NCBI GenBank assembly: GCA_951804945.1
Contig: OX638158.1
Location: 17,856,001 to 17,920,000, forward strand
Direction: 5' to 3'
DNA from: Podarcis cretensis
Lineage: Eukaryota
Length of the DNA: 64,000 nucleotides
Shown here one piece after another: positions 19,501 to 22,500 of the stretch. A program made the position numbers and the translations under genes. Within the stretch, counting starts at the first letter, position 1. Each line of letters opens with the position of its first letter. The notes beneath the pieces are model-generated. The model had not been told where the DNA came from. It was given only the letters and a program-made list of their open reading frames with translations, and made no database searches.

Positions 19501-22500
19501 ATTTTCTCTCCCCAATCTCTGCTGGTCTTTGGGCAACAAGAAAAGGTGTGGTGTTTTTCAGGACACTTTCTGAATTTAATTTGTGGTTGATATATCCCTG
19601 CTGCTTGGTTGGTTGTGACTTCTGCATTTTATATTTGCAAGAATTTTTTAGCTACTTTTCAGAATGTAAATTAAAAAACCCCAGAATACATATGTTTGAG
19701 TGAGTTCCAGCACCTCTTTTTCTAGAAAAATAGTACTTGTCATAGCCATCCATTGCAATGGGTCTACTCTGAGAATTAGGAGTATGGGTAGAAGAATGAG
19801 TAGAAAAGAGAGAACTTGGAAGGAGTTCAACCCTTCCCAACTTCTTTGTTTGTTTGTTTGTTTGTTTGTTTGTTAGACTTATATCCCACTTTTTCTTCTA
19901 AGAGCTCAAGGTGGCGTACATGTTTATCCCCCTTCTCATTTAATCCCCACAATAACCCTGTGAGGTAGATTAGACTGAGAGGCAGTGAGGGTTGAAAGAT
20001 ACATAATTCAAACCAGATTGGACTCTAATACCCAGCTTAGAGCCTACTACCCCATGCCACACCACACACCACACCACACACCACACTAAACAAAGCCTTA
20101 CAACACATACATTCCGGTGTAGATGGCTTGTCCTTGCTGGTTCTGGAGACGGGTTTTGGCCAAATCAATGGGGAAAACACAAGTCACCCCCACAAGTCCT
20201 GCTATACCTCCGTTGATTAACTTAGCTGGAAGGCTGTAAGATAAGTTACAATGATATTCCTTGGTACAGGGATTCAAGCAGGTTGTTGTTGCGTGGCTAT
20301 TCCCTCCACCCCACAGGAGAAATGAAATAAAGACACAGGACGCCAGTGTTATAAGTTAATGGGCGAAAATGGCCACAACTTTATTGATTACAGGTAAGAG
20401 AGGTATTGGCTTTAGGCATTGGCCCCTAACCGACTATCCGGTTCTAACCGGGAAGGGTTAAACACCAACAGGGGGAGCTACCCGAGATGCATATCCCTAG
20501 GCGCTCCCCGAGGGGTTACCGCTCGGGGGCGCGCTTTAGGCCCTAGCCTCCGTAGGTTTCGGACGAGGCGTCGCCCCTCGGAGTCCTTTAACGAACTACC
20601 CTTCACTCATTGGGGGAGGTGATGGCGCTCCTCCCCCCCAATCTCATTTGCATGACAATACCCCGGCCAATGCCTACCGCCACCCGAGCCGAACAAACCG
20701 GCTCGCCGCCAATACCCTCAAACCTGTAACCAATCCCTAATTCCCTTAAAAATATCCGACAGCCAGATGTCATTGCCAGCATCAGTCAAGTGCACGCCAT
20801 CCCAGCGATATAGTGCATCCTTGCAATATTGAATTTCGGGGTGTTTGATAACCCGTCCGCCTAGCGCAGCCACCTTACGTGCGACATTGCGCTCCACAAT
20901 CCGCCTGGCTTTATCCACAGCCGCGGGTTTCACCGCATCCCGCCAAAGCCGCCTTTCCAGCAAGGATGACCAAATTATTGTAGTATTAGCGTGAGATGCC
21001 CTCAAACGCTCCAAATCATTCATAATGTTCCACATGAGGTCCACCCCTTTCCTATAAGCCAGGTCGTTCTCACCCAGTTGTATGACCAAGGCATCAGGGG
21101 CACCTTCCTCCGCAATTCTACTGGATATGACTGGGAAGAATTCTTCCCAGCGCATACCCCTTCTGGTAATCCATGAAACTTTAACGTAGCTAGGTAATTT
21201 GAGGTCAGCATCCCAACGCCTGTGCTCGGCTCGGCGTTTTGCCAAATGAACGATACTGTGGCCGGTAATCCACAGTTGCACCAACGCAGCACCTGAAAGA
21301 ATAAAATAGGAGAGCCGAGTGAGGAGGCATGTAAGCGGTGGGTAGGGGAGAATACTGACAGGAGCTTAAAAAGGCTTCCGAATGTAAGTCTTGTATGCCT
21401 GGGATTTCCAACGCCCCATGTCCATAACCCTTTCAGCCGGTAGGCCCATATGGACGGCGGTGGTCGCTGCCCCAATGCGAAAGGAATGTGCAGCGTATTC
21501 CCCATGTGGAAGACCACAGGCAGCGATCGCTTTGCGCATGACCCTCGTGAACTGATGTCTAGAGAGGAGGGATCCATCGGTATGCAAGAAAAAGGGGCCG
21601 TTAAGTTTGGGTCTCACACACAGATATTTTTTAGCATCTTTTACTGGGCAAGGGCCAGCCTTCTGGGTTGCCTGAAGGCGGATCAAGGCTCCCCTACCAA
21701 GCTGATCGGTCTTGGAACTGCGGATTCTTAATAACACGTGCGAGCTTGCTACCGTTACATCATCCAACAATAGGCCCCTGTCGGCTGCACGGTGTTCACA
21801 GACCACCTCGCCAATACGCAAAGCCCCAAAGAATGCGAAGGAAAATGCCGCCGAAAATAATCTGGCCTCGTACCTTGACCAACAAAGGGCCCTAAGTTTC
21901 CTGCGGATTTTGGTAAGTATGTCAAGTGTTATGGGCCTTCTACCATCTTGGCCCTGTGGTCTGGTCCTACGCCAGCCTTCAAGCATTTTCCGGACCACAA
22001 AATGTGAACAGGGGTCAACGGAGAATAGGGCTTTTGAAAAGAAGGATATAGCTGCCGCATGTATATTCATGGTTTTGGGAGCCCGACCTAGATCTCGCAG
22101 GTGAACCATATACTCAATGACCTCCGCCTTAGATGGCGGCCTGCCAGGCCTGAATCGCTCCTTCTTCCTGCGGAAGGATGTAAAGTCTAGCCAAGCCTTA
22201 TTATAAGAGTTTAGAGTGGAAGGAGCCAGCGCAGACAATACTCCCTTTATTGCTTCTCGTTGCCAATACTCCAGAGGTGCTCCGGAAACGGTTGCGGCTG
22301 CTGCTGCGCATCCGGCGCCAATGAGCGAAAGCGTTCCATCTGGAAACGAGACAGAGCATCCGCGATGTTATTGTCTATACCGGGAACAAATTTGGCAGAA
22401 GCGTGAAGGTTCAACCGAAGGCATGAAAGGACGAAATACCGCAAAAGCGAGGCCACTCTAGGGGAATGCGCAGATTGCCTATTTAGAACTGAGACAACCG

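What the first reader, a model, noticed from the sequence alone, without database searches (positions are those of the whole stretch)
20402..20716. ~315-nt nested multi-stem RNA (or ssDNA) structure filling the element's 3' UTR, with a hammerhead-like half core
Seen, directly after the hydrolase stop codon. Long-range perfect complements close the domain: GGTATTGGC 20402-20410 / 20708-20716 (9 bp), TAGGCATTGGCC 20413-20424 / 20665-20676 (12 bp) and GAAGGGT 20452-20458 / 20598-20604. Internal hairpins: CGAGCCG/CGGCTCG (20685-20705), CCGGTT/AACCGG (20438-20451), CCCCGAG/CTCGGGG extended by GCGC and CTAG pairs (20497-20546), GGAC-GAGG/CCTC-GTCC (20561-20586) and TTGGGGGAGG/CCTCCCCCCCAA (20610-20641). 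In element sense one junction reads CGUUAAA-GGAC..GUCC-GAAA-CCU-ACGG-AGG. That is stem-GAAA-stem as in hammerheads, but without CUGANGA or a canonical NUH. Inference: an undescribed cis-acting RNA domain. It could prime reverse transcription (these elements have no tRNA primer site), act as a packaging or export signal, be a non-canonical self-cleaving ribozyme, or form a folded ssDNA substrate for the YR.
Basis: partly seen in the sequence, partly recalled or inferred. Interest (0 to 1): 0.8.

Follow-up and report, generated by a model that had tools for sequence, protein, structure and literature searches.

The report
Conserved folded tail of lizard Ngaro retrotransposon
The stretch after the last gene of this lizard jumping element really does carry a non-random inverted repeat and several perfect hairpins. 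Related elements appear to share it and keep it better than their genes, but it is not a hammerhead ribozyme and its role is still inferred.

Summary
The 336-nt region folds better than every shuffle, with z -4.6 for sense RNA and -5.6 for antisense. Along 9 kb only this window and the element's 5' end reach z of about -4.

The signal comes mainly from a two-part closing inverted repeat (9 + 12 bp, built from four GGYATTGGC motifs) and three perfect local hairpins. The interior alone is not clearly better than shuffles, z -1.9 and -0.8.

The "hammerhead-like" junction is not supported. There is no Rfam match at E up to 10, no CUGANGA on either strand, and the GGAC/GUCC helix has pair probability near 0.

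The element is Ngaro-type: Gag, RT, tyrosine recombinase (YR), GDSL hydrolase. No split direct repeats were found in this copy, whose 5' UTR has a 169-N gap. The domain lies between the hydrolase stop and the only sense AATAAA.

Contigs from four organisms show a module at about 20283-20743 shared by subfamilies whose hydrolases are about 53% identical. Indels cluster in predicted loops.

Best reading: a conserved cis-acting 3' module for replication. The scan has noted other Ngaro copies in this genome, but not this domain.

The parts
20283..20743 (-). Shared 3' module of the element. It runs from the last ~8 hydrolase codons (..RDWLQV*) to the element's 3' end.
   Evidence: Summed contig word-depth rises from about 500-5,000 in the hydrolase body to about 25,000-310,000 (run X1) across 20348-20743, and falls to 51 in the flank 20240-20275. 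Loose ends at 20737 and 20741 continue as other hydrolase C-termini. The tool warns that contig depth is not a copy number.
20402..20716 (-). Folded domain closed by the two-part inverted repeat.
   Evidence: z -4.1 to -5.6. In one search it is one of only two outliers among 53 sliding windows.
20402..20424 (.). 3' arm in element sense: GGTATTGGC-TT-TAGGCATTGGCC on the + strand. It holds two tandem GGYATTGGC motifs.
   Evidence: All 4 exact motif hits in the 64-kb window lie in the domain (expected 1.28).
20665..20716 (.). 5' arm in element sense: GGCCAATGCCTA ... GCCAATACC on the + strand, interrupted by the 20685-20705 hairpin. Together with the other arm this gives a three-way junction.
   Evidence: The 9-bp helix has P = 0.99 on both strands. 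The 12-bp helix has P = 0.99 on the + strand and 0.18 in sense RNA.
20685..20705 (.). Hairpin CGAGCCG - 7-nt loop - CGGCTCG.
   Evidence: In one search table 4, 8 of the 12 listed indels (1-4 nt) fall at 20690-20698: six in the loop (20692-20698) and two start in the last two bases of the 5' stem arm.
20438..20451 (.). Small hairpin CCGGT-TCTA-ACCGG.
   Evidence: P about 0.9 on both strands. table 4 lists a 1-nt deletion at 20442, at the stem/loop edge.
20506..20528 (.). Hairpin CCCCGAG - 9-nt loop - CTCGGGG.
   Evidence: P is only 0.33-0.38 in the RNA ensembles.
20612..20637 (.). G/C-run hairpin GGGGGAGG - 10-nt loop - CCTCCCCC. The register can slip.
20380..20385 (-). The only AATAAA in element sense in 20283-20760. 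It lies 17 nt after the closing stem and is followed by a CA and a TGTGTCTTTATTT stretch.
   Evidence: That it acts as the poly(A) signal is inference.
20718..21284 (-). GDSL/SGNH hydrolase ORF, the last ORF of the element.
   Evidence: PF13472, E 8.6e-05, below the curated cut-off. (relatives at 51-76% identity, among them Podarcis muralis proteins).
21366..25349 (-). Tyrosine recombinase (21366-22238), RT/RNase H (22247-24244) and Gag-like ORF (23856-25349).
   Evidence: RVT_1 E 4.5e-14; Phage_integrase E 3.4e-04, below the curated cut-off.

Best explanation
The domain is the core of a conserved cis-acting 3'-terminal module of a lizard Ngaro-type tyrosine-recombinase retrotransposon.

It sits between the stop codon of the last gene (the hydrolase) and the element's apparent poly(A) signal, so it would be the last structured part of the genomic RNA and the first part copied into cDNA.

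Its defining feature is a 21-bp two-part helix made of four GGYATTGGC motifs, two on each side in opposite orientation. This helix closes about 240 nt that carry a few perfect hairpins.

I infer that the element's own proteins (RT, Gag or both) recognise this handle to select the template and start or guide reverse transcription. I also infer that the same complementarity in the cDNA helps later strand-transfer or circle-forming steps, in a copy where no split direct repeats were found.

Shown: the stems, their statistical excess, the position, the sharing across subfamilies and organisms, and the absence of ribozyme signatures. Inferred: transcript end, protein recognition, and any role in priming or circularisation.
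For: - The element is Ngaro-type: Gag, RT, YR and GDSL hydrolase in that order on the minus strand.
- No split direct repeats link the 5' and 3' regions, and there are none inside the 3' region.
- Fold z is -4.1 to -5.6 with RNA or DNA parameters on both strands. Only this window and the 5' terminal window reach z -4 in 9 kb.
- A 12-bp long-range inverted repeat occurs in 3 of 1000 shuffles. Three perfect hairpins or more occur in 17 of 2000. The motif GGYATTGGC occurs four times, only here, in the 64 kb.
- In contigs of four organisms, loose ends at 20737 and 20741 translate to WLASVSKSI-like and DVWLGDIISG-like hydrolase ends. The first matches the C-terminus of P0004, which is 53% identical to this hydrolase. 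Diverged subfamilies therefore appear to share the module.
- One contig (X15, record 15) has 14 other letters in 158 nt (20653-20810) against 36 in 205 nt of hydrolase coding sequence.
- Summed word-depth is about 50-100 times higher over the module than over the coding body.
- Of the 12 indels listed (25 more are not shown), 8 fall in or at the edge of the 20685-20705 hairpin loop and 1 at the 20438-20451 hairpin (table 4).
- The single sense AATAAA lies 17 nt after the closing stem.
- In the literature the primer for DIRS-type reverse transcription is unknown, and a 3' hairpin has been suggested as a primer for DIRS-1 (PMC7192593).
Against: - No alignment of related 3' UTRs could be made, so there is no covariation test. 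The conserved arms could be kept as sequence and not as pairs.
- The interior alone is not significantly structured (z -1.9 and -0.8).
- In the sense RNA ensemble the 12-bp helix has only P = 0.18.
- None of the 50 perfect stem pairs is G-U, which is unusual for a structure selected only as RNA.
- The read-laying tool warns that contig depth cannot rank parts of a gene. The excess of module copies might also reflect a separate short repeat family.
- No run on record as RNA holds the stretch, so transcription and the poly(A) site are not shown.
Confidence: 0.5

Rival explanations
1. The module is mainly a separate, abundant short repeat. It could be a non-autonomous derivative, or a SINE- or MITE-like family with inverted ends, present in thousands of copies. 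The Ngaro elements would share it or have captured it, and the fold would be a by-product of its inverted ends.
For: Summed word-depth over 20348-20743 is about 50-100 times that of the hydrolase body in three DNA-type runs. It is uneven inside the module: about 300,000 at 20348-20419 against 25,000-60,000 at 20636-20707 in X1. Many laid contigs are only partly on the stretch. The domain is bounded by inverted repeats.
Against: The listed loose ends at the upstream border (17 contigs each in X5 and X9, agreement 0.68-0.73) continue as hydrolase C-termini and not as random flanks. The border falls at the same codons in different subfamilies, which speaks for an integral part of the elements. 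There is no tRNA-like part and no second copy in the 64-kb window. Depth from contigs is not a copy number, as the tool itself warns.
Confidence: 0.2
2. The inverted GGYATTGGC / GCCAATRCC motifs are double-stranded DNA binding sites. They could bind the tyrosine recombinase as accessory sites, or a host factor such as the CCAAT-binding factor NF-Y. The predicted fold would then be incidental to their inverted arrangement.
For: There are four exact motif copies, two in each orientation, and none elsewhere in the 64 kb. A fifth copy with one mismatch lies at 20654-20662. All stems are perfect Watson-Crick, so they are the same on both strands. The interior is not significantly structured. Most of the fold's z-score comes from these arms.
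Against: The arms lie 240 bp apart, unlike core sites of tyrosine recombinases, which have spacers of 6-8 bp. The domain is about 120 nt inside the element's end, so it is not the crossover site. Perfect local hairpins are also enriched, and listed indels in relatives cluster in or at the edge of hairpin loops. Binding sites alone do not explain either point.
Confidence: 0.15
3. The folded first-strand cDNA, not the RNA, is the functional form. The 21-bp helix and hairpins would form in single-stranded cDNA and serve the recombinase or second-strand synthesis, as folded single strands do for integron attC sites and CTX phage.
For: It is recovered on both strands with DNA parameters. DIRS-1 was reported to amplify through linear single-stranded cDNA (PMC7192593). 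The stems contain no G-U pairs.
Against: The integrated element ends at about 20283, not at the domain, so recombination does not take place within it. There is no experimental or comparative support here. The energy difference between the two architectures in sense RNA is small (3.8 kcal/mol).
Confidence: 0.1
4. It is a self-cleaving ribozyme, either a hammerhead variant or another small ribozyme.
For: One GAAA occurs in sense at 20560.
Against: No Rfam ribozyme family matches at E up to 10 on either strand. CUGANGA is absent on both strands. The GGAC/GUCC helix has pair probability near 0. Table 6 lists no place where molecules begin or end, but these runs are contigs, which cannot show ends.
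Confidence: 0.02

Closest known systems
Ngaro-like YR retrotransposons with an SGNH hydrolase ORF (e.g. Xenopus DIRS-53_XT and DIRS-54_XT; PMC9210276)
   Same: The ORF order is the same: Gag-like, RT/RNase H, tyrosine recombinase, hydrolase. DIRS-54_XT is also reported without split direct repeats.
   Different: The classical Ngaro definition includes split direct repeats (A1 ... B1 A2 B2), and none were found here. In their place, the 3' non-coding region carries an inverted-repeat-closed domain, which those papers do not describe.
DIRS-1 terminal architecture: inverted terminal repeats, internal complementary region, and a 3' hairpin suggested as primer (PMC7192593)
   Same: It is a YR retrotransposon whose non-coding regions hold complementary sequences thought to act in single-stranded replication intermediates. 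Its primer is unknown, and a 3' hairpin has been proposed.
   Different: Here both arms of the inverted repeat lie within about 315 nt at the 3' side. They are not at the two ends of the element, and I found no significant complementarity to the termini.
3' stem-loops of 'stringent' LINEs, shared with partner SINEs and recognised by the LINE reverse transcriptase (established knowledge, from memory)
   Same: Both are conserved 3' non-coding modules that appear better kept and more abundant than the coding body, and that may be shared between autonomous and possibly non-autonomous copies.
   Different: LINEs use target-primed reverse transcription, and their signals are short single hairpins. 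This element encodes Gag and a tyrosine recombinase, and the domain is about 315 nt.
Retroviral 3' UTR export elements, the CTE of Mason-Pfizer monkey virus and the RTE of IAP elements (from memory)
   Same: All are multi-stem structures of about 150-230 nt placed between the last ORF and the poly(A) signal of a retroelement RNA that must leave the nucleus unspliced.
   Different: There is no sequence or Rfam match, and the function is untested.
Hammerhead ribozymes of Penelope-like elements and retrozymes
   Same: Both are structured RNA motifs in the non-coding parts of a retroelement. Other notes of this scan report hammerhead-bearing Penelope elements in the same genome.
   Different: The core motifs and a model match are absent here.

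Membership tests
Ngaro-like YR retrotransposon | Encodes a reverse transcriptase/RNase H and a tyrosine recombinase, with a Gag-like ORF upstream | tested here: met
   RVT_1 E 4.5e-14; Phage_integrase E 3.4e-04 and Phage_int_SAM_4 E 4.4e-03, both below Pfam's cut-offs. A CCCH finger is present in the first ORF.
Ngaro-like YR retrotransposon | Extra SGNH/GDSL hydrolase ORF after the YR (vertebrate Ngaro) | tested here: met
   Lipase_GDSL_2 E 8.6e-05 (23.5 bits, below the cut-off of 32.9); relatives carry PF13472.
Ngaro-like YR retrotransposon | Split direct repeats: A1 at the 5' end and B1-A2-B2 at the 3' end | tested here: not met
   No direct repeat links 25340-27400 with 20240-20760 except a 14-nt match (20732-20745 and 26973-26986), and there is no internal direct repeat in the 3' region. 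Caveat: 169 N at 25530-25698 lie in the 5' UTR and were not filled.
Ngaro-like YR retrotransposon | RT/RH groups with the Ngaro clade in a phylogeny | not tested
   No tree was built. The assignment rests on domain order and the hydrolase.
Hammerhead ribozyme | Conserved core CUGANGA ... GAAA with a three-way junction and an NUH cleavage site | tested here: not met
   no CTGANGA on either strand of 20283-20760; the junction helix GGAC/GUCC has P near 0.
Hammerhead ribozyme | Match to an Rfam hammerhead covariance model | tested here: not met
   cmscan of 19500-21500, both strands, E up to 10. The only two matches are weak lncRNA-family hits outside the domain.
Hammerhead ribozyme | Self-cleavage in vitro | not testable with these tools
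   Needs transcription with and without Mg2+.
Conserved structured cis-acting RNA | Folding energy beyond dinucleotide-shuffled controls | tested here: met
   for the whole domain. For the interior alone it is not met.
Conserved structured cis-acting RNA | Compensatory base changes among relatives | tested here: inconclusive
Loose-end consensuses show the 10-bp core TAGGCATTGG/CCAATGCCTA kept. One possible C-G to A-T exchange at the 11th pair comes from unlinked contigs.

The most novel reading that the evidence does not exclude
In this lizard Ngaro lineage the split direct repeats have been replaced by a folded handle. The four GGYATTGGC motifs would come together as a 21-bp duplex in the single-stranded RNA or cDNA and form the platform on which the element's RT or recombinase acts. 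The same handle would mobilise thousands of short non-autonomous copies, which would be the first SINE-like partner family described for tyrosine-recombinase retrotransposons.
Probability: 0.12. Interest if true: 0.8.

Novelty: new variant of a known kind. Interest (0 to 1): 0.42.

Why it matters
How tyrosine-recombinase retrotransposons start reverse transcription and rebuild their ends is still open. The primer is unknown even for DIRS-1 (PMC7192593). A young, apparently intact element in which no split direct repeats were found, but which has a sharply defined and conserved inverted-repeat domain at the 3' end of its RNA, gives a concrete and mutable candidate for the cis signal. If the many extra copies of the module prove to be non-autonomous elements, that would also show which part of the element its machinery recognises.

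Tried and rejected
The DNA downstream of the related hydrolase genes (P0001-P0007, among them three Podarcis muralis loci) could not be fetched. This blocked the covariation test.
- A metagenome scan for TAGGCATTGG-N(225-255)-CCAATGCCTA gave 25 loci. By my own rough estimate that is about the number chance would give. None resembles the module or encodes the element's proteins. Three of them (L010, L014, L020) are unrelated palindromic sequences sharing only the 20-nt arm.
- The same pattern in viral contigs gave 0 matches.
- Protein-guided scans of viral and prokaryotic genome contigs, and a scan with the 21-nt arm, found nothing.
- Rfam gave nothing. ARAGORN found no tRNA-like part.
- There is no second copy of the module or the element in the window.
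- A search for split direct repeats or 5'-3' complementarity found nothing significant.
- Literature searches for Ngaro together with hairpin, stem-loop or priming found no description.
- Earlier notes of this scan, searched by sequence, returned nothing.
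Full report
**What is there**

The window carries one copy of a four-ORF retrotransposon on the minus strand.
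- Gag-like ORF at 23856-25349, with a weak CCCH finger.
- RT at 22247-24244 (RVT_1, E 4.5e-14).
- Tyrosine recombinase at 21366-22238 (Phage_integrase E 3.4e-04, N-terminal SAM-like domain E 4.4e-03).
- GDSL/SGNH hydrolase at 20718-21284 (E 8.6e-05).

This is the gene order described for vertebrate Ngaro-like elements (PMC9210276).

CpG observed/expected is 0.7-0.94 across the element against 0.1-0.2 in the flanks. Together with the open ORFs, this points to a young insertion. The finding covers the 315 nt that follow the hydrolase stop codon.

**Check of the observation**

Folding energies of 20390-20725, each with 0 of 100 shuffles as stable:

| Strand and parameters | MFE (kcal/mol) | z |
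|---|---|---|
| Sense RNA | -164.5 (shuffles -137.4 ± 5.9) | -4.6 |
| Antisense RNA | -146.4 | -5.6 |
| + strand, DNA parameters | -71.7 | -4.7 |
| - strand, DNA parameters | -76.4 | -4.1 |

- In a sliding scan of 320-nt windows over 18480-27600 (sense strand, 25 shuffles each), only two windows reach z of about -4. They are 20400-20719 and 26800-27119, the latter being the 5' terminal region of the same element. All other windows lie between -2.8 and +1.5.
- A perfect long-range inverted repeat of 12 bp turns up in 3 of 1000 dinucleotide shuffles of the region. Here a 9-bp one also stacks directly outside it.
- Three perfect local hairpins of at least 7 bp are present. Three or more occur in 17 of 2000 shuffles.

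**Where the signal comes from**

- With the arms removed, the interior 20425-20664 gives z -1.9 in sense (6 of 200 shuffles as good) and -0.8 in antisense (45 of 200).
- In the ensemble, the 9-bp closing helix has P = 0.99 on both strands, and the hairpins at 20685-20705 and 20438-20451 have P = 0.86-0.99.
- The 12-bp helix has P = 0.99 on the + strand but only 0.18 in the sense RNA, where alternative pairings are 3.8 kcal/mol better.
- The GAAGGGT/ACCCTTC helix has P = 0 to 0.32.
- The GGAC/GTCC helix, on which the 'stem-GAAA-stem' junction rests, has P near 0 on both strands.

The well-supported anatomy is therefore a two-part closing helix, a three-way junction with the 20685-20705 hairpin, and a few perfect hairpins. 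A uniquely determined nested multi-stem fold is not supported.

Each arm consists of two tandem copies of a 9-mer, GGYATTGGC.
- They lie at 20402 and 20415 on the + strand, and at 20666 and 20708 on the - strand.
- These four are the only exact occurrences in the 64 kb, where 1.28 are expected.
- A fifth copy with one mismatch lies at 20654-20662.
- The reverse complement reads GCCAATRCC, so each strand shows CCAAT-type motifs.
- None of the 50 base pairs of the perfect stems is a G-U pair.

These points keep a DNA-level or both-strand reading alive.

**Hammerhead**

This reading is rejected.
- cmscan of 19500-21500 against all 4227 Rfam families at E up to 10 returns only two weak lncRNA-family hits outside the domain.
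- CUGANGA is absent from both strands of 20283-20760.
- The junction helix is not predicted.
- There is no tRNA-like part either.

**Context inside the element**

- The only AATAAA in element sense lies at 20385-20380, 17 nt after the closing stem. It is followed by a CA and a GU/U-rich stretch.
- I infer that this is the poly(A) signal. If so, the domain is the last structured part of the transcript.
- The element's 3' end is at about 20283, where contig depth collapses.
- No split direct repeats were found. The 5' region (25340-27400) and the 3' region (20240-20760) share only a 14-nt exact match, GGGAATTAGGGATT, at 26986-26973 and 20745-20732. The 3' region has no internal direct repeat.
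- The 169 N at 25530-25698 lie in the 5' UTR and were left as they are, so a repeat hidden there cannot be excluded.

**Relatives**

The hydrolase has relatives at 51-76% identity, three of them annotated in Podarcis muralis.

None of these runs is on record as RNA.

I laid Logan contigs of four runs (organisms A, B, D, H) on 20240-21300 at 80% likeness or more. I started at 20240 to stay clear of the conserved host exon. The results:

1. **Depth.** Summed word-depth in X1 is 51 in the flank, about 11,000-24,000 at 20276-20347, about 25,000-310,000 over 20348-20743, and about 250-5,400 over the hydrolase body. X5 and X9 behave alike. The tool warns that contig depth is no copy number and cannot rank parts of a gene, so I treat this as suggestive only.
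2. **Upstream border.** At 20737 and 20741 the laid contigs continue with sequences unlike this copy but alike among themselves (17 contigs each in X5 and X9, agreement 0.68-0.73). Read in element sense, they translate to DVWLGDIISG-like and WLASVSKSI-like peptides. The second is the C-terminus of P0004 (..GNDIWLASVSKSIWDWLQQ), which is 53% identical to this hydrolase. Diverged subfamilies therefore share the module from the last few codons onward.
3. **One contig compared with itself.** X15 record 15 has 14 other letters in 158 nt at 20653-20810, 36 in 205 nt at 20888-21092, and less than 80% likeness in between. The 20653-20810 part includes some coding sequence.
4. **Indels.** Of the 12 indels listed, 8 fall at 20690-20698: six in the loop of the 20685-20705 hairpin and two starting in the last two bases of its 5' stem arm. 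One falls at 20442 in the small hairpin, one in the C-run at the inner end of the 12-bp arm, and two lie outside the domain. Twenty-five more are not shown.
5. **The 12-bp helix in variants.** Loose-end consensuses keep the 10-bp core TAGGCATTGG / CCAATGCCTA in all four runs, while the two inner pairs vary. One combination (GGA.. on the left arm with ..TCC on the right) would be a C-G to A-T exchange, but the contigs are unlinked, so this is not evidence of covariation.

**Attempts to find related DNA elsewhere**

All failed; the scans are listed under Tried and rejected.

**Interpretation**

Four points favour a cis-acting module needed for the elements' replication over a neutral UTR:
- its position directly before the apparent poly(A) signal;
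- the sharp upstream border at the stop codon in several subfamilies;
- its apparently better conservation than the coding sequence;
- the clustering of the listed length changes in or at the edge of predicted loops.

The literature leaves the initiation of reverse transcription in DIRS-type elements open and mentions a 3' hairpin as a possible primer for DIRS-1. DIRS-1 is also reported to pass through linear single-stranded cDNA (PMC7192593).

My preferred reading, at about 0.5, is a recognition and initiation handle for the element's RT or Gag. Its complementarity would also be available in the cDNA.

The rivals:
- a separate abundant short repeat sharing the module (0.2);
- double-stranded binding sites, with the fold incidental (0.15);
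- a function only in folded cDNA (0.1);
- a ribozyme (0.02).

The decisive test, covariation among many related 3' UTRs, could not be run here.

**Novelty**

- Structured 3' non-coding signals are well known for LINEs and retroviruses.
- For tyrosine-recombinase retrotransposons I found no description in the searchable library. I could not check Repbase.
- I rate the finding as a new variant of a known kind, with moderate interest.
- Other notes of this scan mention further Ngaro copies in this genome, but none describes this domain.

Noticed in passing
window 26780-27130 (minus strand): The element's 5' terminal region is the only other strongly folding stretch in 9 kb: z -4.1 in the scan and -3.5 on refolding. 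It holds a 13-bp palindrome (CCCGCGGGGCTGG / CCAGCCTCGCGGG type), a palindromic GCCAGCCAATCGGCTGGC, a GGGGCGGG box and a CATAAGG, which together look like a promoter.
   Followed up: partly
window 20732-20745 and 26973-26986: A 14-nt exact direct repeat (GGGAATTAGGGATT in element sense). One copy lies at the upstream border of the shared 3' module and the other about 90 nt inside the 5' end. BLAST E is 0.01 in that small search. It may be a vestigial terminal redundancy.
   Followed up: partly
window 20100-20283: The element's 3' end lies about 48 nt upstream of the splice acceptor of a host exon on the same strand. The exon reads [33 protein letters not shown].., which I recall as mitochondrial glutamate carrier-like; I did not search it because it is a conserved, human-like exon. 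The element's AATAAA points the same way as the host gene.
   Followed up: no
window 18000-29500: CpG observed/expected is 0.7-0.94 throughout the element but 0.1-0.2 in both flanks. This fits a very young insertion.
   Followed up: partly
window 25440-25698: An AT-rich simple repeat (AAT/AAAT units) runs into a 169-N gap inside the long 5' UTR. The gap was left unfilled, so any repeat hidden there is unknown.
   Followed up: no
window 26350-26507 and 25951-26024: Tandem duplications in the 5' UTR: two 79-nt units at about 89-90% identity, each with its own GC-rich palindrome, and two 37-nt units at 97% identity.
   Followed up: no
L010:1475-1741, L014:927-1193, L020:832-1098: Three metagenome contigs carry an unrelated near-perfect palindromic unit of about 270 nt. 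Its outer 20 nt happen to match the arm TGGCTTTAGGCATTGGCC at 19 of 20 positions. I judged this coincidental.
   Followed up: partly
window 20393-20612 (run X5): One contig of organism B joins 20393 to 20612 with 11 other letters in between. It is a deletion derivative lacking most of the domain.
   Followed up: no
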